Shown: one piece after another, positions 590 through 28,278 of the stretch
Numbering within the stretch: position 1 is the stretch's first letter
How the letters are laid out: each line of letters begins with the position of its first letter
From: Macrostomum lignano
Taxonomy: Eukaryota
Length of the DNA stretch: 64,000 nt
Reading direction: 5' to 3'
Assembly: GCA_002269645.1 (NCBI GenBank)
Contig: NIVC01000838.1
Span: 124,001 to 188,000 of the forward strand
Notes under the pieces: generated by a model
What the model was told of the DNA's origin: nothing
The model's input: the letters and a program-made list of their open reading frames with translations, nothing else
The model's database searches: none
Position numbers and translations under genes: made by a program

Positions 590-3500
590 CTATTGGTCCA
601 AATTGGCCTTGGAAATGTTCGAGTCACCAAACCGATTCTCAATGACCTGAAACGATGAGTTAATATTTTGTAGACAGTTCTCATCCGCCGACAGCAAGCG
701 GCTTCTATCAGATAGCACCTGGAAAACTGCTGCGTCCGCACGCCGAACTTGAGCAGCCAAGTAATCCAGCATGTCGGCTGCGTCACCGGACTGCAGGTTC
801 CGCATCGACCTAGAATCTAGCTCAACAAACTCCTCCAACGGCGAAACCAAAGATGATGGTACACCAATACCAGATGAAGGCATTGAATATCCGTCAAGAG
901 TGGACAATGCCGAAACACCATCATAAAGCTCCGGACTAGGACTTGCAATGCCCTGCGAATACCGAGGACTAGACAAAGGGACCGGAAAAAGTGTCGACGC
1001 CGATTTCCGCTCCGAATCAATATCCTCCTCTTCTACTAGAGCTGAAGCAGCGCCTCTCTCATCTACGCGACGTCTGTACTCGCCCAGCTCCGAGTCGAGT
1101 CGCTGCAGCGCTACTCGCGTCGCATCTGGCTGCAGCGCCGCTCGCGACTGCTCGACCGAGGTCACGACCGAGTTGTCGAACGGGCCTCCGATGCTTCTAA
1201 GCCGCGACAGTCGATCCGCCATCAGTCTGGCCACTTCCTCGTTCATTGACCTGTCTGGCTGCGCCTGTTGTTCTACTACTGCTGCGTCGTCCGGTATCAC
1301 CTGCGTTTCCTCTTTCTCGTCCTCTGCTAAAGCGGCCGCCGTGGCGCCTCTCTCGTCTACGCGACGTCTGTACTCGCCCAGCTCCGAGTCGAGTCGCTGC
1401 AGCGCTACTCGCGTCGCATCTGGCTGCAGCGCCGCTCGCGACTGCTCGACCGAGGTCACGACCGAGTTGTCGAACGGGCCTCCGATGCTTCTAAGCCGCG
1501 ACAGTCGATCCGCCATCAGTCTGGCCACTTCCTCGTTCATTGACCTGTCTGGCTGCGCCTGTTGTTCTACTACTGCTGCGTCGTCCGGTATCACCTGCGT
1601 TTCCTCTTTCTCGTCCTCTGCTAAAGCGGCCGCCGTGGCGCCTCTCTCGTCTACGCGACGTCTGTACTCGCCCAGCTCCGAGTCGAGTCGCTGCAGCGCT
1701 ACTCGCGTCGCATCTGGCTGCAGCGCCGCTCGCGACTGCTCGACCGAGGTCACGACCGAGTTGTCGAACGGGCCTCCGATGCTTCTAAGCCGCGACAGTC
1801 GATCCGCCATCAGTCTGGCCACTTCCTCGTTCATTGACCTGTCTGGCTGCGCCTGTTGTTCTACTACTGCTGCGTCGTCCGGTATCACCTGCGTTTCCTC
1901 TTTCTCGTCCTCTGCTAAAGCGGCCGCCGTGGCGCCTCTCTCGTCTACGCGACGTCTGTACTCGCCCAGCTCCGAGTCGAGTCGCTGCAGCGCTACTCGC
2001 GTCGCATCTGGCTGCAGCGCCGCTCGCGACTGCTCGACCGAGGTCACGACCGAGTTGTCGAACGGGCCTCCGATGCTTCTAAGCCGCGACAGTCGATCCG
2101 CCATCAGTCTGGCCACTTCCTCGTTCATTGACCTGTCTGGCTGCGCCTGTTGTTCTACTACTGCTGCGTCGTCCGGTATCACCTGCGTTTCCTCTTTCTC
2201 GTCCTCTGCTAAAGCGGCCGCCGTGACGCCTCTCTCGTCTACGCGACGTCTGTACTCGCCCAGCTCCGAGTCGAGTCGCTGCAGCGCTACTCGCGTCGCA
2301 TCTGGCTGCAGCGCCGCTCGCGACTGCTCGACCGAGGTCACGACCGAGTTGTCGAACGGGCCTCCGATGCTTCTAAGCCGCGACAGTCGATCCGCCATCA
2401 GTCTGGCCACTTCCTCGTTCATTGACCTGTCTGGCTGCGCCTGTTGTTCTACTACTGCTGCGTCGTCCGGTATCACCTGCGTTTCCTCTTTCTCGTCCTC
2501 TGCTAAAGCGGCCGCCGTGGCGCCTCTCTCGTCTACGCGACGTCTGTACTCGCCCAGCTCCGAGTCGAGTCGCTGCAGCGCTACTCGCGTCGCATCTGGC
2601 TGCAGCGCCGCTCGCGACTGCTCGACCGAGGTCACGACCGAGTTGTCGAACGGGCCTCCGATGCTTCTAAGCCGCGACAGTCGATCCGCCATCAGTCTGG
2701 CCACTTCCTCGTTCATTGACCTGTCTGGCTGCGCCTGTTGTTCTACTACTGCTGCGTCGTCCGGTATCACCTGCGTTTCCTCTTTCTCGTCCTCTGCTAA
2801 AGCGGCCGCCGTGGCGCCTCTCTCGTCTACGCGACGTCTGTACTCGCCCAGCTCCGAGTCGAGTCGCTGCAGCGCTACTCGCGTCGCATCTGGCTGCAGC
2901 GCCGCTCGCGACTGCTCGACCGAGGTCACGACCGAGTTGTCGAACGGGCCTCCGATGCTTCTAAGCCGCGACAGTCGATCCGCCATCAGTCTGGCCACTT
3001 CCTCGTTCATTGACCTGTCTGGCTGCGCCTGTTGTTCTACTACTGCTGCGTCGTCCGGTATCACCTGCGTTTCCTCTTTCTCGTCCTCTGCTAAAGCGGC
3101 CGCCGTGGCGCCTCTCTCGTCTACGCGACGTCTGTACTCGCCCAGCTCCGAGTCGAGTCGCTGCAGCGCTACTCGCGTCGCATCTGGCTGCAGCGCCGCT
3201 CGCGACTGCTCGACCGAGGTCACGACCGAGTTGTCGAACGGGCCTCCGATGCTTCTAAGCCGCGACAGTCGATCCGCCATCAGTCTGGCCACTTCCTCGT
3301 TCATTGACCTGTCTGGCTGCGCCTGTTGTTCTACTACTGCTGCGTCGTCCGGTATCACCTGCGTTTCCTCTTTCTCGTCCTCTGCTAAAGCGGCCGCCGT
3401 GGCGCCTCTCTCGTCTACGCGACGTCTGTACTCGCCCAGCTCCGAGTCGAGTCGCTGCAGCGCTACTCGCGTCGCATCTGGCTGCAGCGCCGCTCGCGAC

Positions 3501-6500
3501 TGCTCGACCGAGGTCACGACCGAGTTGTCGAACGGGCCTCCGATGCTTCTAAGCCGCGACAGTCGATCCGCCATCAGTCTGGCCACTTCCTCGTTCATTG
3601 ACCTGTCTGGCTGCGCCTGTTGTTCTACTACTGCTGCGTCGTCCGGTATCACCTGCGTTTCCTCTTTCTCGTCCTCTGCTAAAGCGGCCGGGGCGCCTCT
3701 CTCATTTACGCGACGTCTGTACTCGCCCAGCTCCGAGTCGAGTCGCTGCAGCGCTACTCGCGTCGCATCTGGCTGCAGCGCCGCTCGCGACTGCTCGACC
3801 GAGGTCACGACCGAGTTGTCGAACGGGCCTCCGATGCTTCTAAGCCGCGACAGTCGATCCGCCATCAGTCTGGCCACTTCCTCGTTCATTGACCTGTCTG
3901 GCTGCGCCTGTTGTTCTACTACTGCTGCGTCGTCCGGTATCACCTGCGTTTCCTCTTTCTCGTCCTCTGCTAAAGCGGCCGCCGTGGCGCCTCTCTCGTC
4001 TACGCGACGTCTGTACTCGCCCAGCTCCGAGTCGAGTCGCTGCAGCGCTACTCGCGTCGCATCTGGCTGCAGCGCCGCTCGCGACTGCTCGACCGAGGTC
4101 ACGACCGAGTTGTCGAACGGGCCTCCGATGCTTCTAAGCCGCGACAGTCGATCCGCCATCAGTCTGGCCACTTCCTCGTTCATTGACCTGTCTGGCTGCG
4201 CCTGTTGTTCTACTACTGCTGCGTCGTCCGGTATCACCTGCGTTTCCTCTTTCTCGTCCTCTGCTAAAGCGGCCGCCGTGGCGCCTCTCTCGTCTACGCG
4301 ACGTCTGTACTCGCCCAGCTCCGAGTCGAGTCGCTGCAGCGCTACTCGCGTCGCATCTGGCTGCAGCGCCGCTCGCGACTGCTCGACCGAGGTCACGACC
4401 GAGCTGTCGAACGGGCCTCCGATGCTTCTAAGCTGCGACAGTCGATCCGCCATCAGTCTGGCCACTTCCTCGTTCAATAGCTCTTCTAAAGTGTCAAACT
4501 TAAGTGACATTTTCGTTGGATTAATAACGTCGAGTCCTTGATGGTGGACCTGGTCGTCAGCGATTTCGGAATGGCTGTCTATTTCGACTATTAGTGGCCC
4601 AAGTTGAGGTAGTTTTGAGACTGTGCGGTCTTGTTGCTCCCAAACTCCCGTAGATAGTATATACGTTTTTGTTGTATCGAAGTCGGTTGTGAAGTACTTT
4701 AATAGTTGTTTCATTCGAAAAATAGACCTTCTTGCCGCTCTAGCCTTCTTTTTATCTTGCATATGACAGTCTAACATTTCGTCTGCCTTAGCGAATAGCA
4801 TCGCGTACTTTTGCCAAGTGTTGCCTTGAAAGTTGGTACTTAGATACGCTTTAAGTAGCTTTTCTCTCGTTTCTTTCGAAAAATATCTTAACTCACGATG
4901 ATGAACTGGAATACGGCAGAGAGCGCACTGAATGACTTCAAGATGATTTTTGTCCGCCTGAACAATATATTGAATTGATTTTAGCAAAGCATACTCGAAT
5001 TTCGTCAAAGATTTGCTTAGCCTGGCGTATCTTTCAATAGCCAACACTGTCTCGCGGTAACTACGAGACGCTTCAGTTATATGGCTCTGCAGTGTCTCAC
5101 TTATTTTCAGGAGACATACGTGAACGCCAGACCAGTACTGACCGTACCGCTGAAATGTCTTCACGGCTGAGAAATATTGCTCAGAAAAATAATGCAGACC
5201 GACACAGGCAGCGTCTGCGGGAACAACATCCGCGTCACCGAACCTCTCAATCCACAATGAGAGATATGAAAATGATGCCTCGTTGCGCTTTCTAATCTCG
5301 GACCAAAGAGGTTCTTGCTGAACCGCGAAAAGAATTTCTTTAACAGGACCACAAACCAAATCCTCTCTAAACAATGAAGTCATTAGTTGAAGCTGACGCA
5401 CTAACTGTCGAAGGGCAGCTCCAACAAACTGTGCCTGAAGTACGCAGCAAAATGCCGTAAGACCACGATCAACCCTATAACGAAACCAATCAAAAACGCT
5501 CAAAAGCCGTTCAATGCTGCACACCATGGAATCCGTCAAATAAAAATGTTTAGAAAAAGATGTCAAATTTTCATCAAATGCTTCAGAGAGGATGTATGCT
5601 TCAGCATCTGCTTCTGGCTCTTCCTCCTCCTGTTCTGGCGCTGCAGCTTCCGCCTGTTCAGCTGCGGTGATCTCATCAAGGCGGCGCTTGTACTCTGCCA
5701 GCTCCGCGTTCAGTCGCTGCATCGCTCCGGGTCTAGCTGAATGCTGCAGCGCGGCTCGCGCCTGCTCCACCGACGTCAGCACCGAGGCGTCGAACAGTCC
5801 GATGCGATTCAGACGCGCCAGTCGCTCGATCGTAGCGTCAAACAGTGCCGCGTTCATTGCCGCGTCCTCGACGACCGGCTCAGCTTCTGGCTCTTCCTCC
5901 TCCTGTTCTGGCGCTGCAGCTTCCGCCTGTTCAGCTGCGGTGATCTCATCAAGGCGGCGCTTGTACTCTGCCAGCTCCGCGTTCAGTCGCTGCATCGCTC
6001 CGGGTCTAGCTGAATGCTGCAGCGCGGCTCGCGCCTGCTCCACCGACGTCAGCACCGAGGCGTCGAACAGTCCGATGCGATTCAGACGCGCCAGTCGCTC
6101 GATCGTAGCGTCAAACAGTGCCGCGTTCATTGCCGCGTCCTCGACGACCGGCTCAGCTTCTGGCTCTTCCTCCTCCTGTTCTGGCGCTGCAGCTTCCGCC
6201 TGTTCAGCTGCGGTGATCTCATCAAGGCGGCGCTTGTACTCTGCCAGCTCCGCGTTCAGTCGCTGCATCGCTCCGGGTCTAGCTGAATGCTGCAGCGCGG
6301 CTCGCGCCTGCTCCACCGACGTCAGCACCGAGGCGTCGAACAGTCCGATGCGATTCAGACGCGCCAGTCGCTCGATCGTAGCGTCAAACAGTGCCGCGTT
6401 CATTGCCGCGTCCTCGACGACCGGCTCAGCTTCTGGCTCTTCCTCCTCCTGTTCTGGCGCTGCAGCTTCCGCCTGTTCAGCTGCGGTGATCTCATCAAGG

Positions 6501-9500
6501 CGGCGCTTGTACTCTGCCAGCTCCGCGTTCAGTCGCTGCATCGCTCCGGGTCTAGCTGAATGCTGCAGCGCGGCTCGCGCCTGCTCCACCGACGTCAGCA
6601 CCGAGGCGTCGAACAGTCCGATGCGATTCAGACGCGCCAGTCGCTCGATCGTAGCGTCAAACAGTGCCGCGTTCATTGCCGCGTCCTCGACGACCGGCTC
6701 AGCTTCTGGCTCTTCCTCCTCCTGTTCTGGCGCTGCAGCTTCCGCCTGTTCAGCTGCGGTGATCTCATCAAGGCGGCGCTTGTACTCTGCCAGCTCCGCG
6801 TTCAGTCGCTGCATCGCTCCGGGTCTAGCTGAATGCTGCAGCGCGGCTCGCGCCTGCTCCACCGACGTCAGCACCGAGGCGTCGAACAGTCCGATGCGAT
6901 TCAGACGCGCCAGTCGCTCGATCGTAGCGTCAAACAGTGCCGCGTTCATTGCCGCGTCCTCGACGACCGGCTCAGCTTCTGGCTCTTCCTCCTCCTGTTC
7001 TGGCGCTGCAGCTTCCGCCTGTTCAGCTGCGGTGATCTCATCAAGGCGGCGCTTGTACTCTGCCAGCTCCGCGTTCAGTCGCTGCATCGCTCCGGGTCTA
7101 GCTGAATGCTGCAGCGCGGCTCGCGCCTGCTCCACCGACGTCAGCACCGAGGCGTCGAACAGTCCGATGCGATTCAGACGCGCCAGTCGCTCGATCGTAG
7201 CGTCAAACAGTGCCGCGTTCATTGCCGCGTCCTCGACGACCGGCTCAGCTTCTGGCTCTTCCTCCTCCTGTTCTGGCGCTGCAGCTTCCGCCTGTTCAGC
7301 TGCGGTGATCTCATCAAGGCGGCGCTTGTACTCTGCCAGCTCCGCGTTCAGTCGCTGCATCGCTCCGGGTCTAGCTGAATGCTGCAGCGCGGCTCGCGCC
7401 TGCTCCACCGACGTCAGCACCGAGGCGTCGAACAGTCCGATGCGATTCAGACGCGCCAGTCGCTCGATCGTAGCGTCAAACAGTGCCGCGTTCATTGCCG
7501 CGTCCTCGACGACCGGCTCAGCTTCTGGCTCTTCCTCCTCCTGTTCTGGCGCTGCAGCTTCCGCCTGTTCAGCTGCGGTGATCTCATCAAGGCGGCGCTT
7601 GTACTCTGCCAGCTCCGCGTTCAGTCGCTGCATCGCTCCGGGTCTAGCTGAATGCTGCAGCGCGGCTCGCGCCTGCTCCACCGACGTCAGCACCGAGGCG
7701 TCGAACAGTCCGATGCGATTCAGACGCGCCAGTCGCTCGATCGTAGCGTCAAACAGTGCCGCGTTCATTGCCGCGTCCTCGACGACCGGCTCAGCTTCTG
7801 GCTCTTCCTCCTCCTGTTCTGGCGCTGCAGCTTCCGCCTGTTCAGCTGCGGTGATCTCATCAAGGCGGCGCTTGTACTCTGCCAGCTCCGCGTTCAGTCG
7901 CTGCATCGCTCCGGGTCTAGCTGAATGCTGCAGCGCGGCTCGCGCCTGCTCCACCGACGTCAGCACCGAGGCGTCGAACAGTCCGATGCGATTCAGACGC
8001 GCCAGTCGCTCGATCGTAGCGTCAAACAGTGCCGCGTTCATTGCCGCGTCCTCGACGACCGGCTCAGCTTCTGGCTCTTCCTCCTCCTGTTCTGGCGCTG
8101 CAGCTTCCGCCTGTTCAGCTGCGGTGATCTCATCAAGGCGGCGCTTGTACTCTGCCAGCTCCGCGTTCAGTCGCTGCATCGCTCCGGGTCTAGCTGAATG
8201 CTGCAGCGCGGCTCGCGCCTGCTCCACCGACGTCAGCACCGAGGCGTCGAACAGTCCGATGCGATTCAGACGCGCCAGTCGCTCGATCGTAGCGTCAAAC
8301 AGTGCCGCGTTCATTGCCGCGTCCTCGACGACCGGCTCAGCTTCTGGCTCTTCCTCCTCCTGTTCTGGCGCTGCAGCTTCCGCCTGTTCAGCTGCGGTGA
8401 TCTCATCAAGGCGGCGCTTGTACTCTGCCAGCTCCGCGTTCAGTCGCTGCATCGCTCCGGGTCTAGCTGAATGCTGCAGCGCGGCTCGCGCCTGCTCCAC
8501 CGACGTCAGCACCGAGGCGTCGAACAGTCCGATGCGATTCAGACGCGCCAGTCGCTCGATCGTAGCGTCAAACAGTGCCGCGTTCATTGCCGCGTCCTCG
8601 ACGACCGGCTCAGCTTCTGGCTCTTCCTCCTCCTGTTCTGGCGCTGCAGCTTCCGCCTGTTCAGCTGCGGTGATCTCATCAAGGCGGCGCTTGTACTCTG
8701 CCAGCTCCGCGTTCAGTCGCTGCATCGCTCCGGGTCTAGCTGAATGCTGCAGCGCGGCTCGCGCCTGCTCCACCGACGTCAGCACCGAGGCGTCGAACAG
8801 TCCGATGCGATTCAGACGCGCCAGTCGCTCGATCGTAGCGTCAAACAGTGCCGCGTTCATTGCCGCGTCCTCGACGACCGGCTCAGCTTCTGGCTCTTCC
8901 TCCTCCTGTTCTGGCGCTGCAGCTTCCGCCTGTTCAGCTGCGGTGATCTCATCAAGGCGGCGCTTGTACTCTGCCAGCTCCGCGTTCAGTCGCTGCATCG
9001 CTCCGGGTCTAGCTGAATGCTGCAGCGCGGCTCGCGCCTGCTCCACCGACGTCAGCACCGAGGCGTCGAACAGTCCGATGCGATTCAGACGCGCCAGTCG
9101 CTCGATCGTAGCGTCAAACAGTGCCGCGTTCATTGCCGCGTCCTCGACGACCGGCTCAGCTTCTGGCTCTTCCTCCTCCTGTTCTGGCGCTGCAGCTTCC
9201 GCCTGTTCAGCTGCGGTGATCTCATCAAGGCGGCGCTTGTACTCTGCCAGCTCCGCGTTCAGTCGCTGCATCGCTCCGGGTCTAGCTGAATGCTGCAGCG
9301 CGGCTCGCGCCTGCTCCACCGACGTCAGCACCGAGGCGTCGAACAGTCCGATGCGATTCAGACGCGCCAGTCGCTCGATCGTAGCGTCAAACAGTGCCGC
9401 GTTCATTGCCGCGTCCTCGACGACCGGCTCAGCTTCTGGCTCTTCCTCCTCCTGTTCTGGCGCTGCAGCTTCCGCCTGTTCAGCTGCGGTGATCTCATCA

Positions 9501-12500
9501 AGGCGGCGCTTGTACTCTGCCAGCTCCGCGTTCAGTCGCTGCATCGCTCCGGGTCTAGCTGAATGCTGCAGCGCGGCTCGCGCCTGCTCCACCGACGTCA
9601 GCACCGAGGCGTCGAACAGTCCGATGCGATTCAGACGCGCCAGTCGCTCGATCGTAGCGTCAAACAGTGCCGCGTTCATTGCCGCGTCCTCGACGACCGG
9701 CTCAGCTTCTGGCTCTTCCTCCTCCTGTTCTGGCGCTGCAGCTTCCGCCTGTTCAGCTGCGGTGATCTCATCAAGGCGGCGCTTGTACTCTGCCAGCTCC
9801 GCGTTCAGTCGCTGCATCGCTCCGGGTCTAGCTGAATGCTGCAGCGCGGCTCGCGCCTGCTCCACCGACGTCAGCACCGAGGCGTCGAACAGTCCGATGC
9901 GATTCAGACGCGCCAGTCGCTCGATCGTAGCGTCAAACAGTGCCGCGTTCATTGCCGCGTCCTCGACGACCGGCTCAGCTTCTGGCTCTTCCTCCTCCTG
10001 TTCTGGCGCTGCAGCTTCCGCCTGTTCAGCTGCGGTGATCTCATCAAGGCGGCGCTTGTACTCTGCCAGCTCCGCGTTCAGTCGCTGCATCGCTCCGGGT
10101 CTAGCTGAATGCTGCAGCGCGGCTCGCGCCTGCTCCACCGACGTCAGCACCGAGGCGTCGAACAGTCCGATGCGATTCAGACGCGCCAGTCGCTCGATCG
10201 TAGCGTCAAACAGTGCCGCGTTCATTGCCGCGTCCTCGACGACCGGCTCAGCTTCTGGCTCTTCCTCCTCCTGTTCTGGCGCTGCAGCTTCCGCCTGTTC
10301 AGCTGCGGTGATCTCATCAAGGCGGCGCTTGTACTCTGCCAGCTCCGCGTTCAGTCGCTGCATCGCTCCGGGTCTAGCTGAATGCTGCAGCGCGGCTCGC
10401 GCCTGCTCCACCGACGTCAGCACCGAGGCGTCGAACAGTCCGATGCGATTCAGACGCGCCAGTCGCTCGATCGTAGCGTCAAACAGTGCCGCGTTCATTG
10501 CCGCGTTTTCTTTTTGGTTTCCTGCTTTTGTTCGTATTGGAATTCTATTGTGTCTGCGATTTCGTTTCGGAATGGTAGCATTTTTGGGAGTGAGTCTGTT
10601 GTTTTTTGTTGTATTTGCCATAATCCGGTCGAAAGTATGTAGTTTCTAGTGTGATCAAAGTCTTTGGTGTAAATATGCAGTAGTCGCTTGAACCTTCCCA
10701 GTGCTTGTCGTCCTACTGGTGCACTTTGACCTTTAGTGAGCTGATGCTGAAGGCCTTTCTCTGCATGCAAAAATATGGATAAAAACTTTTTCCAAGTGGA
10801 CCCCTCCGTTAATAGTAAACGAGGCGCTTGATAAAGAAAGCTTCTAGTTGACTCAGTTAGAAATTCATATCGGAGTTTTTTAAGAGGAATCCGGAGTAAA
10901 GAGCATTGGATCGCCTCACAATAGTAGTCTGTAGCTTCTGAGATATGGCCTATCGCAGTTTTCATTGACAGTTCAAAACGTACCATGTCGCTGTTTAGAA
11001 GTGCGTACTTGTTTAGCATGGCTAAACAATTAGACAATTCTGCTGAAAAATCTGCAACCAAGAATTTATTCATTGATACCATCGATATTTGAAGACCGTG
11101 CCAATATGATCTTCTACTATGTAAAATTTCCAGTTGACGATGTATCGAATTAAAAAATTCTGATAAATTCACGTTCCTACACGACGACAGTTGATTCTCC
11201 GAATTCGATGCAATTTCTATCCAATATGAGATTTGAGCAACTTCAGCAGTATGCCGTTCTGAGATCCATGACCAAAACTTACACCGCATTAGCTCTACCA
11301 TAGTCTGACGAAGAGGCGAAACAAGGAACTGGATCAACTCGGCAGACCTTGCGATACGTAGCTGCTGTAAAACTCCTTTCACAAGAAAACTCGAATGGCA
11401 AAGCTGGACCCCGGATGCTAGGCTACGAATGCCAGGCCGAAGCTCTTGCAAAAACATTGGGCGAGCGTCCACAGTTTATGGAGACCATGTACCAGAGGCA
11501 TAGGAGACAAGGAATCAGACGGATAAACAGAGCACAAGAAGTTAATCTGGTCCACTAAGTCTTTCCAACGCTGCTGCTCGGTTACCTTGTTTTCCTGACC
11601 AATAACCGTCAACATTGACGCTTGCTTCTTGTAAGAATCCAACGCACCGTCGAGGCGTTCCATCGATCCGGGTGTTGCACCACTCGACAGCAGAGCCCGT
11701 GCCATTCGACAGATGTCAGCACCGACTCGTCATACAGTCCAGACGCCTTCAACTTGTTCAGCCTCGAGATCATCAGCTCCGTCACAGCCGCGCTGGTCGG
11801 TGCTGCTTCCTCTGGCGGCTGCTTTGACTCGACACGCTTTCCAACCTCGTCCGTGGAAACCTGTGGCTTCTCGACCTCAGCTGCAGGAGCTTCTGACTTT
11901 GGAGTCTCGTCCGGTTGTACGCCATCTTCCTTGTCAACGACAGCCGCGGCCAGAAGAGCGTCTCTATCTGACGCTTGCTTCTTGTAAGAATCCAACGCAC
12001 CGTCGAGGCGTTCCATCGATCCGGGTGTTGCACCACTCGACAGCAGAGCCCGTGCCATTCCGACAGATGTCAGCACCGACTCGTCATACAGTCCAGACGC
12101 CTTCAACTTGTTCAGCCTCGAGATCATCAGCTCCGTCACAGCCGCGCTGGTCGGTGCTGCTTCCTCTGGCGGCTGCTTTGACTCGACACGCTTTCCAACC
12201 TCGTCCGTGGAAACCTGTGGCTTCTCGACCTCAGCTGCAGGAGCTTCTGACTTTGGAGTCTCGTCCGGTTGTACGCCATCTTCCTTGTCAACGACAGCCG
12301 CGGCCAGAAGAGCGTCTCTATCTGACGCTTGCTTCTTGTAAGAATCCAACGCACCGTCGAGGCGTTCCATCGATCCGGGTGTTGCACCACTCGACAGCAG
12401 AGCCCGTGCCATTCCGACAGATGTCAGCACCGACTCGTCATACAGTCCAGACGCCTTCAACTTGTTCAGCCTCGAGATCATCAGCTCCGTCACAGCCGCG

Positions 12501-15500
12501 CTGGTCGGTGCTGCTTCCTCTGGCGGCTGCTTTGACTCGACACGCTTTCCAACCTCGTCCGTGGAAACCTGTGGCTTCTCGACCTCAGCTGCAGGAGCTT
12601 CTGACTTTGGAGTCTCGTCCGGTTGTACGCCATCTTCCTTGTCAACGACAGCCGCGGCCAGAAGAGCGTCTCTATCTGACGCTTGCTTCTTGTAAGAATC
12701 CAACGCACCGTCGAGGCGTTCCATCGATCCGGGTGTTGCACCACTCGACAGCAGAGCCCGTGCCATTCCGACAGATGTCAGCACCGACTCGTCATACAGT
12801 CCAGACGCCTTCAACTTGTTCAGCCTCGAGATCATCAGCTCCGTCACAGCCGCGCTGGTCGGTGCTGCTTCCTCTGGCGGCTGCTTTGACTCGACACGCT
12901 TTCCAACCTCGTCCGTGGAAACCTGTGGCTTCTCGACCTCAGCTGCAGGAGCTTCTGACTTTGGAGTCTCGTCCGGTTGTACGCCATCTTCCTTGTCAAC
13001 GACAGCCGCGGCCAGAAGAGCGTCTCTATCTGACGCTTGCTTCTTGTAAGAATCCAACGCACCGTCGAGGCGTTCCATCGATCCGGGTGTTGCACCACTC
13101 GACAGCAGAGCCCGTGCCATTCCGACAGATGTCAGCACCGACTCGTCATACAGTCCAGACGCCTTCAACTTGTTCAGCCTCGAGATCATCAGCTCCGTCA
13201 CAGCCGCGCTGGTCGGTGCTGCTTCCTCTGGCGGCTGCTTTGACTCGACACGCTTTCCAACCTCGTCCGTGGAAACCTGTGGCTTCTCGACCTCAGCTGC
13301 AGGAGCTTCTGACTTTGGAGTCTCGTCCGGTTGTACGCCATCTTCCTTGTCAACGACAGCCGCGGCCAGAAGAGCGTCTCTATCTGACGCTTGCTTCTTG
13401 TAAGAATCCAACGCACCGTCGAGGCGTTCCATCGATCCGGGTGTTGCACCACTCGACAGCAGAGCCCGTGCCATTCCGACAGATGTCAGCACCGACTCGT
13501 CATACAGTCCAGACGCCTTCAACTTGTTCAGCCTCGAGATCATCAGCTCCGTCACAGCCGCGCTGGTCGGTGCTGCTTCCTCTGGCGGCTGCTTTGACTC
13601 GACACGCTTTCCAACCTCGTCCGTGGAAACCTGTGGCTTCTCGACCTCAGCTGCAGGAGCTTCTGACTTTGGAGTCTCGTCCGGTTGTACGCCATCTTCC
13701 TTGTCAACGACAGCCGCGGCCAGAAGAGCGTCTCTATCTGACGCTTGCTTCTTGTAAGAATCCAACGCACCGTCGAGGCGTTCCATCGATCCGGGTGTTG
13801 CACCACTCGACAGCAGAGCCCGTGCCATTCCGACAGATGTCAGCACCGACTCGTCATACAGTCCAGACGCCTTCAACTTGTTCAGCCTCGAGATCATCAG
13901 CTCCGTCACAGCCGCGCTGGTCGGTGCTGCTTCCTCTGGCGGCTGCTTTGACTCGACACGCTTTCCAACCTCGTCCGTGGAAACCTGTGGCTTCTCGACC
14001 TCAGCTGCAGGAGCTTCTGACTTTGGAGTCTCGTCCGGTTGTACGCCATCTTCCTTGTCAACGACAGCCGCGGCCAGAAGAGCGTCTCTATCTGACGCTT
14101 GCTTCTTGTAAGAATCCAACGCACCGTCGAGGCGTTCCATCGATCCGGGTGTTGCACCACTCGACAGCAGAGCCCGTGCCATTCCGACAGATGTCAGCAC
14201 CGACTCGTCATACAGTCCAGACGCCTTCAACTTGTTCAGCCTCGAGATCATCAGCTCCGTCACAGCCGCGCTGGTCGGTGCTGCTTCCTCTGGCGGCTGC
14301 TTTGACTCGACACGCTTTCCAACCTCGTCCGTGGAAACCTGTGGCTTCTCGACCTCAGCTGCAGGAGCTTCTGACTTTGGAGTCTCGTCCGGTTGTACGC
14401 CATCTTCCTTGTCAACGACAGCCGCGGCCAGAAGAGCGTCTCTATCTGACGCTTGCTTCTTGTAAGAATCCAACGCACCGTCGAGGCGTTCCATCGATCC
14501 GGGTGTTGCACCACTCGACAGCAGAGCCCGTGCCATTCCGACAGATGTCAGCACCGACTCGTCATACAGTCCAGACGCCTTCAACTTGTTCAGCCTCGAG
14601 ATCATCAGCTCCGTCACAGCCGCGCTGGTCGGTGCTGCTTCCTCTGGCGGCTGCTTTGACTCGACACGCTTTCCAACCTCGTCCGTGGAAACCTGTGGCT
14701 TCTCGACCTCAGCTGCAGGAGCTTCTGACTTTGGAGTCTCGTCCGGTTGTACGCCATCTTCCTTGTCAACGACAGCCGCGGCCAGAAGAGCGTCTCTATC
14801 TGACGCTTGCTTCTTGTAAGAATCCAACGCACCGTCGAGGCGTTCCATCGATCCGGGTGTTGCACCACTCGACAGCAGAGCCCGTGCCATTCCGACAGAT
14901 GTCAGCACCGACTCGTCATACAGTCCAGACGCCTTCAACTTGTTCAGCCTCGAGATCATCAGCTCCGTCACAGCCGCGCTGGTCGGTGCTGCTTCCTCTG
15001 GCGGCTGCTTTGACTCGACACGCTTTCCAACCTCGTCCGTGGAAACCTGTGGCTTCTCGACCTCAGCTGCAGGAGCTTCTGACTTTGGAGTCTCGTCCGG
15101 TTGTACGCCATCTTCCTTGTCAACGACAGCCGCGGCCAGAAGAGCGTCTCTATCTGACGCTTGCTTCTTGTAAGAATCCAACGCACCGTCGAGGCGTTCC
15201 ATCGATCCGGGTGTTGCACCACTCGACAGCAGAGCCCGTGCCATTCCGACAGATGTCAGCACCGACTCGTCATACAGTCCAGACGCCTTCAACTTGTTCA
15301 GCCTCGAGATCATCAGCTCCGTCACAGCCGCGCTGGTCGGTGCTGCTTCCTCTGGCGGCTGCTTTGACTCGACACGCTTTCCAACCTCGTCCGTGGAAAC
15401 CTGTGGCTTCTCGACCTCAGCTGCAGGAGCTTCTGACTTTGGAGTCTCGTCCGGTTGTACGCCATCTTCCTTGTCAACGACAGCCGCGGCCAGAAGAGCG

Positions 15501-18500
15501 TCTCTATCTGACGCTTGCTTCTTGTAAGAATCCAACGCACCGTCGAGGCGTTCCATCGATCCGGGTGTTGCACCACTCGACAGCAGAGCCCGTGCCATTC
15601 CGACAGATGTCAGCACCGACTCGTCATACAGTCCAGACGCCTTCAACTTGTTCAGCCTCGAGATCATCAGCTCCGTCACAGCCGCGCTGGTCGGTGCTGC
15701 TTCCTCTGGCGGCTGCTTTGACTCGACACGCTTTCCAACCTCGTCCGTGGAAACCTGTGGCTTCTCGACCTCAGCTGCAGGAGCTTCTGACTTTGGAGTC
15801 TCGTCCGGTTGTACGCCATCTTCCTTGTCAACGACAGCCGCGGCCAGAAGAGCGTCTCTATCTGACGCTTGCTTCTTGTAAGAATCCAACGCACCGTCGA
15901 GGCGTTCCATCGATCCGGGTGTTGCACCACTCGACAGCAGAGCCCGTGCCATTCCGACAGATGTCAGCACCGACTCGTCATACAGTCCAGACGCCTTCAA
16001 CTTGTTCAGCCTCGAGATCATCAGCTCCGTCACAGCCGCGCTGGTCGGTGCTGCTTCCTCTGGCGGCTGCTTTGACTCGACACGCTTTCCAACCTCGTCC
16101 GTGGAAACCTGTGGCTTCTCGACCTCAGCTGCAGGAGCTTCTGACTTTGGAGTCTCGTCCGGTTGTACGCCATCTTCCTTGTCAACGACAGCCGCGGCCA
16201 GAAGAGCGTCTCTATCTGACGCTTGCTTCTTGTAAGAATCCAACGCACCGTCGAGGCGTTCCATCGATCCGGGTGTTGCACCACTCGACAGCAGAGCCCG
16301 TGCCATTCCGACAGATGTCAGCACCGACTCGTCATACAGTCCAGACGCCTTCAACTTGTTCAGCCTCGAGATCATCAGCTCCGTCACAGCCGCGCTGGTC
16401 GGTGCTGCTTCCTCTGGCGGCTGCTTTGACTCGACACGCTTTCCAACCTCGTCCGTGGAAACCTGTGGCTTCTCGACCTCAGCTGCAGGAGCTTCTGACT
16501 TTGGAGTCTCGTCCGGTTGTACGCCATCTTCCTTGTCAACGACAGCCGCGGCCAGAAGAGCGTCTCTATCTGACGCTTGCTTCTTGTAAGAATCCAACGC
16601 ACCGTCGAGGCGTTCCATCGATCCGGGTGTTGCACCACTCGACAGCAGAGCCCGTGCCATTCCGACAGATGTCAGCACCGACTCGTCATACAGTCCAGAC
16701 GCCTTCAACTTGTTCAGCCTCGAGATCATCAGCTCCGTCACAGCCGCGCTGGTCGGTGCTGCTTCCTCTGGCGGCTGCTTTGACTCGACACGCTTTCCAA
16801 CCTCGTCCGTGGAAACCTGTGGCTTCTCGACCTCAGCTGCAGGAGCTTCTGACTTTGGAGTCTCGTCCGGTTGTACGCCATCTTCCTTGTCAACGACAGC
16901 CGCGGCCAGAAGAGCGTCTCTATCTGACGCTTGCTTCTTGTAAGAATCCAACGCACCGTCGAGGCGTTCCATCGATCCGGGTGTTGCACCACTCGACAGC
17001 AGAGCCCGTGCCATTCCGACAGATGTCAGCACCGACTCGTCATACAGTCCAGACGCCTTCAACTTGTTCAGCCTCGAGATCATCAGCTCCGTCACAGCCG
17101 CGCTGGTCGGTGCTGCTTCCTCTGGCGGCTGCTTTGACTCGACACGCTTTCCAACCTCGTCCGTGGAAACCTGTGGCTTCTCGACCTCAGCTGCAGGAGC
17201 TTCTGACTTTGGAGTCTCGTCCGGTTGTACGCCATCTTCCTTGTCAACGACAGCCGCGGCCAGAAGAGCGTCTCTATCTGACGCTTGCTTCTTGTAAGAA
17301 TCCAACGCACCGTCGAGGCGTTCCATCGATCCGGGTGTTGCACCACTCGACAGCAGAGCCCGTGCCATTCCGACAGATGTCAGCACCGACTCGTCATACA
17401 GTCCAGACGCCTTCAACTTGTTCAGCCTCGAGATCATCAGCTCCGTCACAGCCGCGCTGGTCGGTGCTGCTTCCTCTGGCGGCTGCTTTGACTCGACACG
17501 CTTTCCAACCTCGTCCGTGGAAACCTGTGGCTTCTCGACCTCAGCTGCAGGAGCTTCTGACTTTGGAGTCTCGTCCGGTTGTACGCCATCTTCCTTGTCA
17601 ACGACAGCCGCGGCCAGAAGAGCGTCTCTATCTGACGCTTGCTTCTTGTAAGAATCCAACGCACCGTCGAGGCGTTCCATCGATCCGGGTGTTGCACCAC
17701 TCGACAGCAGAGCCCGTGCCATTCCGACAGATGTCAGCACCGACTCGTCATACAGTCCAGACGCCTTCAACTTGTTCAGCCTCGAGATCATCAGCTCCGT
17801 CACAGCCGCGCTGGTCGGTGCTGCTTCCTCTGGCGGCTGCTTTGACTCGACACGCTTTCCAACCTCGTCCGTGGAAACCTGTGGCTTCTCGACCTCAGCT
17901 GCAGGAGCTTCTGACTTTGGAGTCTCGTCCGGTTGTACGCCATCTTCCTTGTCAACGACAGCCGCGGCCAGAAGAGCGTCTCTATCTGACGCTTGCTTCT
18001 TGTAAGAATCCAACGCACCGTCGAGGCGTTCCATCGATCCGGGTGTTGCACCACTCGACAGCAGAGCCCGTGCCATTCCGACAGATGTCAGCACCGACTC
18101 GTCATACAGTCCAGACGCCTTCAACTTGTTCAGCCTCGAGATCATCAGCTCCGTCACAGCCGCGCTGGTCGGTGCTGCTTCCTCTGGCGGCTGCTTTGAC
18201 TCGACACGCTTTCCAACCTCGTCCGTGGAAACCTGTGGCTTCTCGACCTCAGCTGCAGGAGCTTCTGACTTTGGAGTCTCGTCCGGTTGTACGCCATCTT
18301 CCTTGTCAACGACAGCCGCGGCCAGAAGAGCGTCTCTATCTGACGCTTGCTTCTTGTAAGAATCCAACGCACCGTCGAGGCGTTCCATCGATCCGGGTGT
18401 TGCACCACTCGACAGCAGAGCCCGTGCCATTCCGACAGATGTCAGCACCGACTCGTCATACAGTCCAGACGCCTTCAACTTGTTCAGCCTCGAGATCATC

Positions 18501-18580
18501 AGCTCCGTCACAGCCGCGCTGGTCGGTGCTGCTTCCTCTGGCGGCTGCTTTAAAGCTTTTTCGGAAGATTTTCTTTCCAT
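590..18580 (-). CDS. Giant intronless tandem-repeat protein of unknown family (~5997 aa if three 1-nt deletions are repaired); seen as ORFs 11609-18580, 11418-11705, 10495-11472 and 590-10621
   Basis: The four same-strand ORFs overlap and join by three -1 shifts. All array units are multiples of 3 (354, 273, 294 bp) and keep the frame. The three repeat families share a protein core, and the two spacer domains are homologous at the protein level. The ATG at 18580 follows an in-frame TAA two codons upstream. Confidence 0.75.
1050..4476 (-). repeat. Coding tandem array 3: 294-bp (98-aa) unit, 12 cores
   Basis: Periodicity of 294 seen directly (shadow ORFs at 1246, 1540, 1834 ...). One unit is 291 bp (variant near 3690). 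Point variants lie near 2226 and in the 4400-4435 copy. Confidence 0.95.
4480..5600 (-). other. Unique spacer domain copy A2 (~370 aa) of the giant protein
   Basis: Non-repetitive, AT-richer and fully open. Motifs YWSG, IQCALCRIP, TWQKY and DFDTTKTYILSTGVW match copy A1. Confidence 0.8.
5610..10506 (-). repeat. Coding tandem array 2: 273-bp (91-aa) unit, 18 copies
   Basis: Shadow ORFs every 273 bp from 5741 to 10382. Translated units are identical. Confidence 0.95.
10510..11610 (-). other. Unique spacer domain copy A1 (~365 aa), interrupted by indels
   Basis: Motifs YWHG, IQCSLLRIP, TWKKF and DFDHTRNYILSTGLW align with A2. Confidence 0.75.
11616..18551 (-). repeat. Coding tandem array 1: 354-bp (118-aa) unit, ~19.6 copies
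   Basis: Shadow ORFs every 354 bp. Units look identical except for one missing C near 11707 in the last copy (gccattcgac vs gccattccgac). Confidence 0.95.
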
Positions 18581-18738
18581 TGCTTTTTAGCTTTTTAATG
18601 CAAAGCAACGGTATTATAAAATCCGTATAGTTTGGTTACTTCAAGGAACATGTTTTAGACTTGTTATCTTGTGGCGTTGAAGTTAAATAACGTAATTTTT
18701 GGCCATAAAAATTAACGATGAATGTTGATTAGGAAAGG

Positions 18739-18746: not shown

Positions 18747-19989
18747 AATTATGGCTCAGAGATCAAGCGCGACTTTTAGCGGTTGCGGCCTACATGTAAC
18801 CATAGACACTACTATATATGTAGGAGATTGCGTGTTTTTCAAACATTCCTATGCCTTGAGTCTTAGGAAGTGTTGTGTAGGGACCACACAGCATGCCGTG
18901 GTTGACTACAGAGAATTGAGCTAACACAGAGCGCCAATATTTGTATTTTAAGCCGAAGCCAAAATCCCAATTCCTCAGTCTCCTACTTCTCGACCATCGG
19001 CAAGAAGTCAAAAAGATAGGAGTACGAGTATATAGGGTATACAAAGCATTCATGCAATCTATTTCTTAATATGGAAGTATCAAGAAATTTAATGGGCTGA
19101 AGAAACTACAGATGTCCGTTCATTTATTCAATGTGTAGTGAGGCATCTGTCGTATTTGAAAATATCGTAAAAAGAACCGACTCGACATATAACAATCGGC
19201 TTTAAAGTTTGGGAAATTATGCTACAAATACTCGCAGACACAGGTAATAAATTAGTAAGTCGTTGAATTGCAAATATTTGTTTCTAGCCAGACCGACGGA
19301 GGAACTCTTCGACTGCGACTGGCTGTGTGTTGAGACCGTCTCATTGAACAAATTCAGCCGCTGAAGGCTATGCTGGAGCATTGGAAACCAGGCACTAAGC
19401 TGTATATAATGGAGAGGGCAAAGCCACAACGTACACCTGTCAATTATTCAATATGTCAGGCTGTGTGACTTTATAAACGCATCTTTTCGTCATTCAAGAC
19501 CCATTCTTTAGCCGCAGAATGCCGAATTGTCCTATGCTGCCAGCTACGAGTATTCGCTCGATATGCGCAAATAGACTACTAACGATGAGAAGCCTGTAAG
19601 TAGTTATACTAAATAAATAAACGCTAGAAAAGTACAAGAAAGTGTTTCGAAAGTTTAGACACATGCTAAACGTTTGTTCTCTTAATTGGTTCGCACTAAA
19701 TGAACAGGAAAAAAACTAGAGATAAGTATGTAAAATAGGAATAATAATTATTAGTTGGCCGAGAACAAGCATCTTTGAGGGCGGAGATAACGGTTTCGCT
19801 AAAACATAGTCAAATTTTGAAATTAATTGTGACGTTCGACACAAAGAAGCTTTTATATAAATGCGAGGCATTTAAAACATTTTTCGTTCAACAAAAAACA
19901 GAGTTCAAGATTTTTAGGTGGATGGATTTAGCAGGTTTAGGCTCGGTTTAGAAGGCTCAAGATTGAGGTGGTTCATGGGTTCAGTAGGT

Positions 19990-21145
19990 TCCAGGATCAG
20001 TGGGTTCAGGGATCAGTGGGTTAAGAGATCAGTGGGTTAAGAGATCAGTGGGTTCAGGGATCAGTAGGTTCAGGGATCAGTGGGTTCAGGGATCAGTTGG
20101 ATAAGAGATCAGTGGATTAAGAGATCAGTGGGTTCAGGGATCAGTAGGTTCAGGGATCAGTGGGTTCAGGGATCAGTGGGCTCAGGGATCAGTGGGTTCA
20201 GGGATCAGTTGGATAAGAGATCAGTGGATTAAGAGATCAGTGGGTTCAGGGATCAGTAGGTTCAGGGATCAGTGGGTTAAGAGATCAGTGGGTTCAGGGA
20301 TCAGTGGGCTCAGGGATCAGTGGGTTCAGGGATCAGTTGGATAAGAGATCAGTGGATTAAGAGATCAGTGGGTTCAGGGATCAGTGGGTTCAGGGATCAG
20401 TGGGTTAAGAGATCAGTGGGTTCAGGGATCAGTGGGTTAAGAGATCAGTGGGCTCAGGGATCAGTGGGCTCAGGGATCAGTGGGTTCAGGGATCGGTGGG
20501 TTCAGGGATCAGTGGGTTAAGAGATCAGTGGGCTCAGGGATCAGTGGGCTCAGGGATCAGTGGGTTCAGGGATCGGTGGGTTCAGGGATCAGTGGGTTAA
20601 GAGATCAGTGGGTTCAGGGATCAGTGGGTTAAGAGATCAGTGGGCTCAGGGATCAGTGGGTTAAGAGATCAGTGGGTTCAGGGATCAGTGGGTTCAGGGA
20701 TCAGTGAGTTCAGGGATCAATGGGTTCAGGGTTCAGTGGGTTCAGGGATCAGTGGGCTCAGGGATCAGTGAGTTCAGGGATCAGTGAGTTCAGGGATCAG
20801 TGGGTTCAGGGTTCAGCGGGTTCAGGGATCAGTGGGCTCAGGGATCAGTGAGTTCAGGGATCAGTGAGTTCAGGGATCAGTGGGTTAAGGGATCAGTGGG
20901 CTCAGGGATCAGTGAGTTCAGGGATCAGTGAGTTCAGGGATCAGTGGGTTAAGGGATCAGTGGGCTCAGGGATCAGTGGGTTCAAGGATCAGTGGGTTCA
21001 AGGATCAGTGGGCTCAGGGATCAGTGGGCTCAGGAATCAGTGGGTTCAAGGATCAGTGGGCTCAGGGATCAGTGGGCTCAGGGATCAGTGGGTTCAGGGA
21101 TCAGTGGGTTCAGGGATCAGTGGGCTCAGGAATCAGTGGGTTCAT
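19990..21145. repeat. 16-bp minisatellite (GGGATCAGTGGGTTCA)n downstream of the epsilon-tubulin stop
   Basis: Direct periodicity, about 70 copies. Confidence 0.95.
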
Positions 21146-26125: not shown

Positions 26126-26189
26126 CCCCAATTCGCTTTAAGACAATGGCACTTCGAAACGAACCTGGGACAGCTAGATTAAACAAGCA

Positions 26190-28200: not shown

Positions 28201-28278
28201 GTGAGGAAAGGAGAGGGGAGGATATTGAGCATCCCAAAGCCAGCAGTCCTGCACTTTCCCCAAGACTCAGACCGCCCC

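What the first reader, a model, noticed from the sequence alone, without database searches (positions are those of the whole stretch)
590..18580. An ~18-kb intronless gene for a ~6000-aa beads-on-a-string protein of no recognisable family
Seen: one minus-strand frame organised as short N-term, (118 aa) x ~20, domain A1, (91 aa) x 18, domain A2, (98 aa) x 12, then a Ser/Pro-rich tail. That is about 50 helical modules joined by acidic, Cys-free linkers. There is no signal peptide at the 18580 ATG and no intron, although most neighbouring genes have them. Inference: a giant filamentous or elastic structural/scaffold protein, or a multivalent binding polymer. It is unlike titin, spectrin or mucin repeats, or the flatworm adhesive proteins I recall. 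This is the best candidate for an undescribed system in the window.
Basis: partly seen in the sequence, partly recalled or inferred. Interest (0 to 1): 0.9.

Follow-up and report, generated by a model that had tools for sequence, protein, structure and literature searches.

The report
Giant orphan repeat-protein gene, Macrostomum
A real gene of about 18 kb in the flatworm Macrostomum lignano encodes a roughly 6,000-residue acidic protein built from 50 near-identical three-helix modules, with no relatives in any database; its reading frame in this assembly is broken by three probable sequencing errors, and its function is unknown.

Summary
The window is contig NIVC01000838.1 of the M. lignano Mlig_3_7 assembly. 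The three minus-strand tandem arrays are real: 354 nt x19.6, 273 nt x17.9 and 294 nt x11.7, with units 99-100% identical. Two homologous all-helical domains (26% identity) and a Ser-rich tail are also there.

The region is not one frame as sequenced. It reads as three ORFs in three frames. Each break is a single-base deletion in a mononucleotide run (11707, 11472, 10511-10515). A sister contig has those bases and is open through R1-A1-R2 for 6,743 codons. Restoring the three bases gives one ORF of 5,997 codons (650 kDa, pI 4.6).

The repeat core is predicted with good confidence as a three-helix bundle (pLDDT 82). The linkers are acidic and predicted disordered. There is no signal peptide and no membrane segment. 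Pfam, PDB sequence and fold searches, and four large protein searches found only fragmentary "hypothetical protein" models from the same species.

My best reading is a lineage-restricted cytoplasmic beads-on-a-string scaffold or elastic protein. The function is inferred, not shown. Copy numbers differ widely between contigs and should not be trusted. Interest is moderate.

The parts
18554..18580 (-). Start codon (ATG at 18578-18580) and unique 9-residue N-terminus, MERKSSEKA. There is an in-frame TAA 9 nt upstream.
   Evidence: The ATG is conserved in sister contigs L003 and L004. No hydrophobic signal-like segment.
11616..18553 (-). R1 array: 354-nt (118-aa) unit, 19.6 copies and 20 cores. 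Each unit is a three-helix core plus a P/E/V/K/A-rich acidic linker of about 40 aa.
   Evidence: TRF. 19 of 19 complete units identical. Translation. Core counts.
11707..11707 (-). Frame break 1: a single G where sister contigs have GG (GTCGGAATGG -> GTCGAATGG) in the last R1 unit. It shifts the frame and creates the stop at 11609-11611.
10505..11615 (-). Domain A1: about 371 aa, all-helical, Cys-containing, homologous to A2. In the window it sits in a different frame from both flanking arrays.
   Evidence: 325-codon ORF 10495..11472. tblastn against A2: 26% identity over 288 aa. Alignment. In-frame versions in P0005 and L004.
11472..11472 (-). Frame break 2: CTGGTGG in sister contigs reads CTGTGG here (one G missing), near the N-terminus of A1.
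   Evidence: P0003 and P0005 read HKLVDARPMF straight through.
10511..10515 (-). Frame break 3: an A5 run where sister contigs have A6, at the A1-R2 junction.
   Evidence: L004 reads ...EFQYEQKQETKKENAAMNAALFD... in one frame.
5609..10504 (-). R2 array: 273-nt (91-aa) unit, 17.9 copies and 18 cores, with a Glu/Ala-rich linker of about 15 aa.
   Evidence: TRF. 17 of 17 complete units identical. Translation.
4475..5608 (-). Domain A2: 378 aa, all-helical, in frame with both the R2 and R3 arrays.
   Evidence: AF2 predicts it helical but at low confidence. Against sister copy L002: 9 synonymous and 14 non-synonymous changes, no indels.
1052..4474 (-). R3 array: 294-nt (98-aa) unit, 11.7 copies and 12 cores. 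Three variant units, one of them 291 nt long.
   Evidence: TRF..
590..1051 (-). C-terminal tail of about 153 aa (Ser 17.5%, one Cys) and the stop codon at 590-592.
   Evidence: The tail is 98.8% identical without gaps in L002.

Best explanation
One intronless gene of Macrostomum lignano encodes a very large, acidic, soluble intracellular protein of about 6,000 aa in this contig; the true length is uncertain.

Architecture: N-terminus of 9 aa, then (R1)x20, A1, (R2)x18, A2, (R3)x12, then a tail.

- Each repeat is a three-helix bundle of about 75 residues, followed by a disordered acidic linker of 15-45 residues. The protein is therefore a string of about 50 small folded beads on flexible tethers, interrupted by two paralogous all-helical domains of about 370 aa.
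- The three frame breaks in the window are most likely uncorrected single-base homopolymer deletions of the PacBio-based assembly, not biology.
- The arrays are kept near-identical by unequal crossing-over or gene conversion, and they change copy number quickly.

Inferred mechanism: a cytoplasmic structural or elastic scaffold, or a multivalent binder. Its identical modules would each present the conserved G-L/P-Y/F-D-x-S-V-L/V-T-S-V surface to the same partner. The PEVK-like and poly-Glu linkers would act as entropic springs and spacers.

Shown: the anatomy, the paralogy of the parts, the predicted module fold, and the absence of detectable relatives. Inferred: that it is a single mRNA and protein, its cellular location, and its function.
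For: Origin and assembly:
- The window is 100% identical to NIVC01000838.1 of GCA_002269645.1.
- Mlig_3_7 was assembled from PacBio reads with Canu and polished with Pilon. It contains 180 Mb of redundant blocks that are at least 95% identical (PMC5730564).

Frame breaks look like errors:
- The window's three breaks are 1-nt deletions in mononucleotide runs, absent from L004.
- L004 is open for 6,743 codons through 26 R1 units, A1 and at least 37 R2 units.
- Each sister contig carries its own private 1-nt run deletions elsewhere: L003 has two in A1, L001 has two in A2, and L004 has one at the 5' end.
- Between the window and L004 across the 1.3-kb A1 segment and the 5' end of the gene (320 nt compared, the last ~140 coding) there are 4 indels in coding sequence against 1 substitution. 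That ratio is typical of consensus error, not of divergence.
- Restoring the three bases gives one 5,997-codon ORF.

Evidence that it codes:
- A1 and A2 have diverged to 26% identity, yet both keep ORFs of 325-378 codons.
- The R1, R2 and R3 cores are 35-51% identical, with 20 invariant positions, while the linkers share nothing.

Fold and location:
- AF2 on the 78-aa core gives three helices, pLDDT 82.3 and pTM 0.71. The linkers have pLDDT 27-35.
- No signal peptide or TM segment; pI 4.6.

Gene models and precedent:
- The deposited gene models come from an RNA-seq-based annotation pipeline. They cover the R1-A1, A1, R2-A2-R3 and R3 pieces, and those spanning the R1-A1 and R2-A2-R3 junctions have no introns.
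- In the same species, giant repeat genes have been recovered only as unconnected transcripts (PMC6410801).
Against: - In the sequence as given the frame is broken three times within 1.2 kb and nowhere else in 18 kb. No contig examined is intact from end to end.
- I had no reads, cDNA or peptides, so expression as one mRNA is inferred from fragmentary gene models.
- The DV1 line carries redundant chromosome copies, so real decay of one copy cannot be excluded.
- Recent divergence of A2 between copies shows only weak constraint: 14 non-synonymous against 9 synonymous changes, roughly dN/dS 0.5.
- GC3 of A1 and A2 (0.39-0.40) is close to the non-coding background.
- The A-domain model has low confidence (pLDDT 25-50).
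- Function rests on architecture alone. No expression site is known: identifier searches of the literature and of two supplements found nothing.
Confidence: 0.6

Rival explanations
1. The frame breaks are real. This copy of the locus is split or decaying. It would encode a 2,323-aa R1-only protein ending at 11609 and a separate 3,343-aa R2-A2-R3 protein starting at 10621, with A1 untranslated or translated on its own. Other genomic copies of the redundant DV1 karyotype would carry the intact gene.
For: - The ORFs as sequenced.
- The annotators called a separate 309-aa model starting at the Met after break 2 on this very contig (P0006).
- Mlig_3_7 has 180 Mb of duplicated blocks, which could relax selection on one copy.
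- There is an ATG at 10621 upstream of the R2 array.
Against: - All eight indels seen among four contigs are private 1-nt deletions in mononucleotide runs.
- Indels outnumber substitutions 4 to 1 between the window and L004.
- About 17 kb of array and the A2 domain remain perfectly open in the same copy.
- The A1 ORF itself is intact in the window.
Confidence: 0.17
2. It is a polyprotein precursor. The giant chain would be cut in the linkers into about 50 small three-helix proteins of 9-13 kDa. Known parallels are profilaggrin, which is processed intracellularly, and the nematode polyprotein antigens, which are secreted.
For: - Near-identical units in one uninterrupted coding block, with variable copy number.
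- Each R1 linker contains a dibasic K-R (…DEVGKR/VESK…), and R2 and R3 contain KRR and RRR.
- The units are autonomous small folded domains separated by accessible disordered linkers.
Against: - No signal peptide, so the furin-type secretory route is unlikely.
- In R2 and R3 the basic triplets lie inside predicted helix 3, not in the linker.
- No S100 or other known precursor head domain.
- The two large A domains have no counterpart in known polyproteins.
- No evidence of cleavage.
Confidence: 0.1
3. It is a transcribed but functionless, recently expanded coding-like satellite. The arrays would be young expansions in a very satellite-rich genome, and the long ORF a by-product of stop-free units.
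For: - The window is full of satellites.
- The antisense strand of each array is also open.
- Units are 100% identical, so expansion or homogenisation is recent.
- No homologue outside the species.
Against: - Three different array types share a conserved core at 35-51% identity, while their linkers have diverged completely.
- A1 and A2 are at 26% identity and both are still open.
- The module fold is predicted with confidence.
- GC1>GC3>GC2 periodicity in the sense frame.
- Arrays and unique domains are in a common frame in L004 and from R2 to the tail in the window.
Confidence: 0.06

Closest known systems
Mlig-ap2 and Mlig-ap1, the giant adhesive proteins of M. lignano (PMC6410801)
   Same: - Same species, and no homology outside the lineage.
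- Giant size: 5,407 and 14,794 aa.
- Mlig-ap2 also has two successive arrays of long repeats (21 x 255 aa, then 25 x 221 aa).
- Their transcripts were assembled as several unconnected pieces and needed manual curation on Mlig_3_7.
   Different: - The adhesives are secreted gland products with vWD, TIL, C8, EGF, LDL-receptor, TSP-1 and lectin domains. Mlig-ap1 has Lys/Arg-rich basic regions and a Cys-rich (11%) domain region.
- The present protein is acidic (pI 4.6) and has no signal peptide.
- It has none of those domains at Pfam E<=1, and has Cys only in the A domains and once in the tail.
Spectrin-superfamily rods (spectrin, dystrophin, nesprin) and the bacterial Ebh FIVAR-GA rod
   Same: Long tandem arrays of three-helix-bundle modules in very large, non-secreted structural proteins (established knowledge). 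The module here is predicted as a three-helix bundle.
   Different: - No Pfam Spectrin, GA or FIVAR hit at E<=1, and no significant Foldseek hit (best E 0.9).
- The modules are about 75 aa rather than 106 aa.
- They are separated by disordered acidic linkers of 15-45 aa, rather than joined by a continuous helix.
- There are no CH, EF-hand, PH or KASH domains.
- Copies are 99-100% identical, whereas spectrin repeats are highly diverged from one another.
Titin PEVK and poly-E elastic segments
   Same: The R1 linker is rich in P, E, V, K and A, and the R2 linker is a Glu/Ala/Pro run. These compositions are associated with entropic-spring behaviour (established knowledge).
   Different: - No Ig or Fn3 domains and no kinase domain.
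- The resemblance is in composition only, and elasticity has not been tested.
Polyproteins of near-identical units: profilaggrin and other S100-fused proteins, and nematode polyprotein allergens (ABA-1 family)
   Same: Many near-identical units in one uninterrupted coding block, copy-number variation, and helical units of about 10-15 kDa (established knowledge).
   Different: - No S100 head domain and no signal peptide.
- No regular linker cleavage motif common to all three arrays.
- Two large non-repeat domains are embedded between the arrays.
Trypanosomatid giant repetitive cytoskeletal proteins (MARPs and FAZ-type proteins)
   Same: Lineage-restricted, very large, intronless, dozens of almost identical repeats, cytoplasmic, and thought to bind a cytoskeletal polymer through many sites (established knowledge).
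   Different: - No sequence similarity was found in any search.
- The repeat here is a folded bundle of about 75 aa plus a linker, not a short 38-aa motif.
- No cytoskeletal association is known for this protein.

Membership tests
Spectrin repeat family (Pfam PF00435) | Sequence-profile match to the 106-aa spectrin repeat | tested here: not met
   hmmscan of the R1, R2 and R3 units against Pfam-A at E<=1 lists no Spectrin hit.
Spectrin repeat family (Pfam PF00435) | Three-helix-bundle module | tested here: met
   The AF2 model of the 78-aa core has helices 4-25, 30-43 and 49-77, pLDDT 82.3. The fold is generic: Foldseek against the PDB gives no significant match (best E 0.9).
Spectrin repeat family (Pfam PF00435) | Contiguous repeats joined helix-to-helix, plus CH, EF or PH accessory domains | tested here: not met
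   The modules are separated by low-pLDDT acidic linkers of 15-45 aa. No accessory domains were found.
Titin/twitchin-type elastic proteins | Ig and Fn3 domain arrays | tested here: not met
   No Ig or Fn3 hits in any unit, in A2 or in the tail.
[quoted passage not shown] | vWD, TIL, EGF, TSP-1 and lectin domains, Lys/Arg-rich basic regions in Mlig-ap1, and secretion from adhesive glands | tested here: not met
   No such Pfam domains. pI 4.6. No signal-like N-terminus. Family features taken from PMC6410801.
Mucins | Pro/Thr/Ser-rich tandem repeats, a signal peptide, and Cys-rich terminal domains | tested here: not met
   The repeats are Ala/Glu/Leu/Arg-rich helical units. No signal peptide.
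Polyprotein precursors (profilaggrin; nematode polyprotein allergens) | Head domain (S100) or signal peptide, and a regular cleavage site in every linker | tested here: not met
   No S100 domain or signal peptide. K-R occurs in the R1 linker only; KRR and RRR in R2 and R3 lie within predicted helix 3.
Polyprotein precursors (profilaggrin; nematode polyprotein allergens) | Proteolytic release of monomer units | not testable with these tools
   Needs a Western blot or MS of worm extracts.
KDPG aldolase (TIM barrel), the only PDB sequence hit | Full-length TIM-barrel homology | tested here: not met
   Only a 50-residue local match around TSVEQxRxA, E 0.0088 and 19 bits. All the hits are derivatives of one T. 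maritima enzyme. The same segment is modelled as helices here. I judge it a chance match.
   Three ORFs in three frames.
   L004 is open from nt 1511 to the locus end, through R1 x26, A1 and R2 x37 or more. The window itself is open from R2 to the stop. No single contig was seen intact from ATG to stop.
   Only fragmentary gene models from the RNA-seq-based annotation pipeline are available.

The most novel reading that the evidence does not exclude
A previously unrecognised class of giant cytoskeletal spring or scaffold, specific to macrostomid flatworms. About 50 or more identical three-helix beads, of a fold family with no detectable relatives, are tethered by PEVK-like and poly-Glu linkers. 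Rapid copy-number change in three independently homogenised arrays would tune the length of the protein, and so its reach or compliance. A more speculative variant: this very acidic polymer is part of the still unidentified negatively charged releasing activity that detaches the basic adhesive Mlig-ap1. That would require a secretory exon which I did not find.
Probability: 0.2. Interest if true: 0.7.

Novelty: new variant of a known kind. Interest (0 to 1): 0.45.

Why it matters
If the single-gene reading holds, this is one of the largest proteins of a regeneration and bioadhesion model animal, and it is currently invisible in the annotation, where it is split into at least seven hypothetical fragments.

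- It adds a new small three-helix module and a new all-helical domain of about 370 aa, neither with any detectable relative.
- It is a clean natural example of concerted evolution of three paralogous arrays within one gene: the cores are conserved while the linkers have been replaced.
- It is a cautionary case for annotation. Homopolymer errors in redundant regions of long-read assemblies, together with repeat collapse in short-read transcriptomes, can hide giant genes.
- Functionally, it may point to an unstudied structural element of flatworm cells.

Tried and rejected
- **Intron test.** I checked whether the frame changes could be introns. Break 1 is an exact one-base loss inside an otherwise perfect repeat unit. 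Break 2 could be bridged by a 38-nt GT..AG segment. The sister contigs read straight through with one extra base, so I rejected introns.
- **Pfam.** Scanning the units, A2 and the tail gave only sub-threshold noise: HBM E 0.004, Ish1, DUF7853, RF-1.
- **PDB sequence profiles.** The only hits were a local KDPG-aldolase motif (E 0.009) and GroEL (E 0.8). I rejected both as chance.
- **Foldseek against the PDB.** The 567-aa model gave TM about 0.1, which is meaningless at pLDDT 45. The core model gave only generic three-helix bundles such as MIT/LIP5 and a tRNA-synthetase fragment, E>=0.9.
- **Large protein searches.** Three word-indexed searches and one exhaustive phmmer run returned only M. lignano fragments.
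- **Literature.** Searches for the locus tags and accessions, and for the locus tags in two supplements, returned nothing.
- **Upstream conservation.** I hoped it would reveal extra 5' exons. It was uninformative because the copies are 97-100% identical throughout.
- **Neighbouring tubulin gene.** I found no evidence of a functional link with it.
Full report
**Origin of the window.** The best protein hits are hypothetical proteins of Macrostomum lignano. The locus fetched for one of them (L005, contig NIVC01000838.1 of GCA_002269645.1, assembly Mlig_3_7) is 100% identical to the window over every unique segment tested. According to its authors, that assembly was made from PacBio reads with Canu and polished with Pilon. 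It contains 15% simple and tandem repeats and 180 Mb of redundant blocks at least 95% identical, because the DV1 line carries extra chromosome copies. Its gene models were derived from RNA-seq (PMC5730564).

- Tandem Repeats Finder reports three minus-strand arrays: 11616-18551 (354 nt x19.6), 5610-10506 (273 nt x17.9) and 1050-4476 (294 nt x11.7), at 99-100% identity.
- All 19 and all 17 complete units of the first two arrays are identical. In the third array, 8 of 11 are identical.
- Translated on the minus strand, the units are 118, 91 and 98 aa, and there are 20, 18 and 12 cores.
- Two unique segments lie between the arrays: A1 (10505-11615) and A2 (4475-5608). They are homologous, at 26% identity over 288 aa.
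- A 153-aa Ser-rich tail follows the last array, and the stop codon is at 590-592.
- Cys occurs only in A1, A2 and once in the tail. The linkers carry a net charge of -8 to -11. There is no signal-like or membrane-like hydrophobic segment.

**What does not hold as written.** The region is not one frame. It reads as three ORFs: 11609..18580 (2,323 aa), 10495..11472 (325 aa, a different frame) and 590..10621 (3,343 aa). A three-frame display shows where the frame changes:
- Inside the last R1 unit, GTCGGAATGG has become GTCGAATGG.
- Near the start of A1.
- In an A-run at the A1-R2 junction.

**Sister copies explain the breaks.** Sister copies of the locus lie on three other contigs of the same assembly (L003+L001 = NIVC01002842.1, L004 = NIVC01002841.1, L002 = NIVC01001166.1).
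- Aligning the A1 region shows that the window lacks exactly three single bases that L004 has: a G at 11707, a G at 11472, and an A in the run at 10511-10515.
- L004 is open for 6,743 codons through 26 R1 units, A1 and at least 37 R2 units.
- The deposited model P0005 reads R1 into A1 without interruption.
- Each sister contig has its own private one-base deletions in mononucleotide runs elsewhere: two in A1 of L003, two in A2 of L001, and one just after the ATG of L004.
- Between the window and L004 there are four coding indels against one substitution, across the 1.3-kb A1 segment and the 5' end of the gene (320 nt compared, the last ~140 coding).

This pattern fits residual long-read consensus errors in regions where short-read polishing fails because the copies are redundant. 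Restoring the three bases yields one ORF of 5,997 codons, 650 kDa, pI 4.6. I therefore accept the single-gene reading as the most likely one (about 0.75 for one gene). I note that no contig examined is intact from start to stop, and that real decay of this copy cannot be excluded.

**Is it coding, and on which strand?** ORF length inside the arrays proves little, because the antisense strand also has one open frame per array. The better evidence is this:
- The unique A domains are open on the minus strand, and A2 is in frame with both neighbouring arrays.
- A1 and A2 have diverged to 26% identity, and both remain open.
- The three core types keep 35-51% identity and 20 invariant positions, including the hydrophobic pattern and the motif G-L/P-Y/F-D-x-S-V-L/V-T-S-V, while their linkers are unrelated.
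- The sense frame shows GC1>GC3>GC2.
- Intronless gene models cover the R1-A1 and R2-A2-R3 junctions.

Recent constraint is only moderate. A2 differs from the L002 copy by 14 non-synonymous and 9 synonymous changes, with no indel.

**Structure.** AlphaFold2 on the alignment of the three 78-aa cores gives a three-helix bundle (helices 4-25, 30-43 and 49-77) with pLDDT 82.3 and pTM 0.71. In the 567-aa construct the two cores score 64-83, the linkers 27-35, and the A domain 25-50. The A domain is predicted all-helical but is not reliably modelled. The picture is about 50 small folded beads on flexible acidic tethers, plus two larger helical domains.

**Relatives.** No search found anything outside M. 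lignano.
- Pfam at E<=1 gives only noise.
- PDB sequence profiles give one local 50-residue match to a KDPG-aldolase strand-loop-helix (E 0.009), which I treat as chance.
- Foldseek against the PDB gives nothing significant. The core resembles generic three-helix bundles such as MIT domains, at E>=0.9.
- Three searches of the 5.8-billion-cluster collection and one exhaustive phmmer run over 1.84 billion representatives returned only M. lignano fragments of this locus and its sister copies.
- The tail has no deposited model at all.

**Function.** Nothing was tested directly.
- The architecture argues for an intracellular structural, elastic or scaffolding role, or for multivalent binding of one partner. 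It is very large, soluble and acidic. It has identical folded modules with a conserved polar surface on helix 2, linkers of P/E/V/K/A or poly-Glu composition, and no secretion signal.
- A polyprotein reading is possible but weaker. Only the R1 linker has a dibasic site, and there is no signal peptide and no known head domain.
- A junk-satellite reading is unlikely, given the deep paralogy with preserved frames.
- Searches for the locus tags and accessions in the literature, and for the locus tags in two supplementary data sets, found nothing, so the site of expression is unknown.

**Comparison with known systems.**
- The closest precedent in organisation is Mlig-ap2 of the same animal. It is giant, lineage-specific, and has two successive arrays of long repeats, and it was assembled only from unconnected transcripts (PMC6410801). 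It is, however, a secreted adhesive with classical extracellular domains. None of those features is met here.
- The closest analogies in likely physics are spectrin-type three-helix rods and titin PEVK springs. Membership of those families was tested by profile and fold search and is not met.

**Caveats on size.** Copy numbers differ greatly between contigs: 20/18/12 here, 17/about 47/at least 18 on NIVC01002842.1, and 26/at least 37 on NIVC01002841.1. Arrays of 5-13 kb made of identical units are hard to size with the reads used, so 5,997 aa is an assembly-dependent figure. The perfect identity of the units may also be partly a consensus effect.

**Verdict.** This is a real, probably single, giant orphan gene with a new module and a new domain. 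It is broken in this assembly by probable errors and fragmented in the public annotation. It is worth a targeted experiment, but with no evidence yet of what it does I score interest at 0.45. I class it as a new variant of a known kind: a lineage-specific giant tandem-repeat protein.

Noticed in passing
window 21228-26137, minus strand: An epsilon-like tubulin gene lies directly upstream on the same strand. Exon-like ORFs are at 26137-25916, 25432-24998 (Pfam Tubulin, E 2.4e-27), 24994-24758 and 21407-21228. The gaps between exon-like segments, which look like introns, hold satellite arrays: 21-nt x83 at 21616-23354, 29-nt at 23965-24704 and 30-nt at 25481-25806. The epsilon assignment rests on my recollection of TUBE1 motifs, not on a test.
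   Followed up: partly
window 29168-29701, minus strand: A 178-aa ORF with an N-terminal hydrophobic segment and a cytochrome b5-like heme/steroid-binding domain (Pfam PF00173, E 3.7e-5, just above the gathering score). It may be a neuferricin- or PGRMC-like gene.
   Followed up: partly
window 19970-63848: Very high satellite load. Examples: a 34-nt unit x166 at 52527-58184, 34-nt x40 at 46172-47514, 16-nt x73 at 19970-21144, 19-nt x55 at 33029-34089, (GGAGA)n at 27189-28222, and (GACA)n, (AGAC)n and (TAAC)n runs. Several create spurious long ORFs in both strands.
   Followed up: no
window 590-18580: Strong compositional split inside one gene. The arrays have GC 0.58-0.64 and GC3 0.59-0.68. 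The A1 and A2 domains have GC 0.42 and GC3 0.39-0.40, close to the flanks (0.37-0.38). The neighbouring tubulin exons have GC3 0.66-0.76. This may reflect GC-biased gene conversion during array homogenisation, or weaker constraint on the A domains.
   Followed up: partly
L002 (NIVC01001166.1, 112498-135325 reversed): This contig holds an inverted partial duplicate of the locus: R2 x19, A2 and R3 x8 on one strand, facing R3 x17 and the tail on the other. It is either a real palindromic rearrangement or a misassembly.
   Followed up: no
L001/L003 (NIVC01002842.1), L004 (NIVC01002841.1): Array copy numbers differ widely between sister contigs: R1 17, 20 and 26; R2 18, at least 37 and about 47; R3 12 and at least 18. 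In L001, similarity to the window's tail stops after the R3 array (about 13726), although more R3 cores follow up to 17071.
   Followed up: partly
window 948-4541, 5592-10649 and 11713-18630, plus strand: Antisense ORFs of 1,197, 1,685 and 2,305 aa (Ser/Ala/Cys-rich) span each array and end at its edges. They are by-products of stop-free repeat units, not genes.
   Followed up: yes
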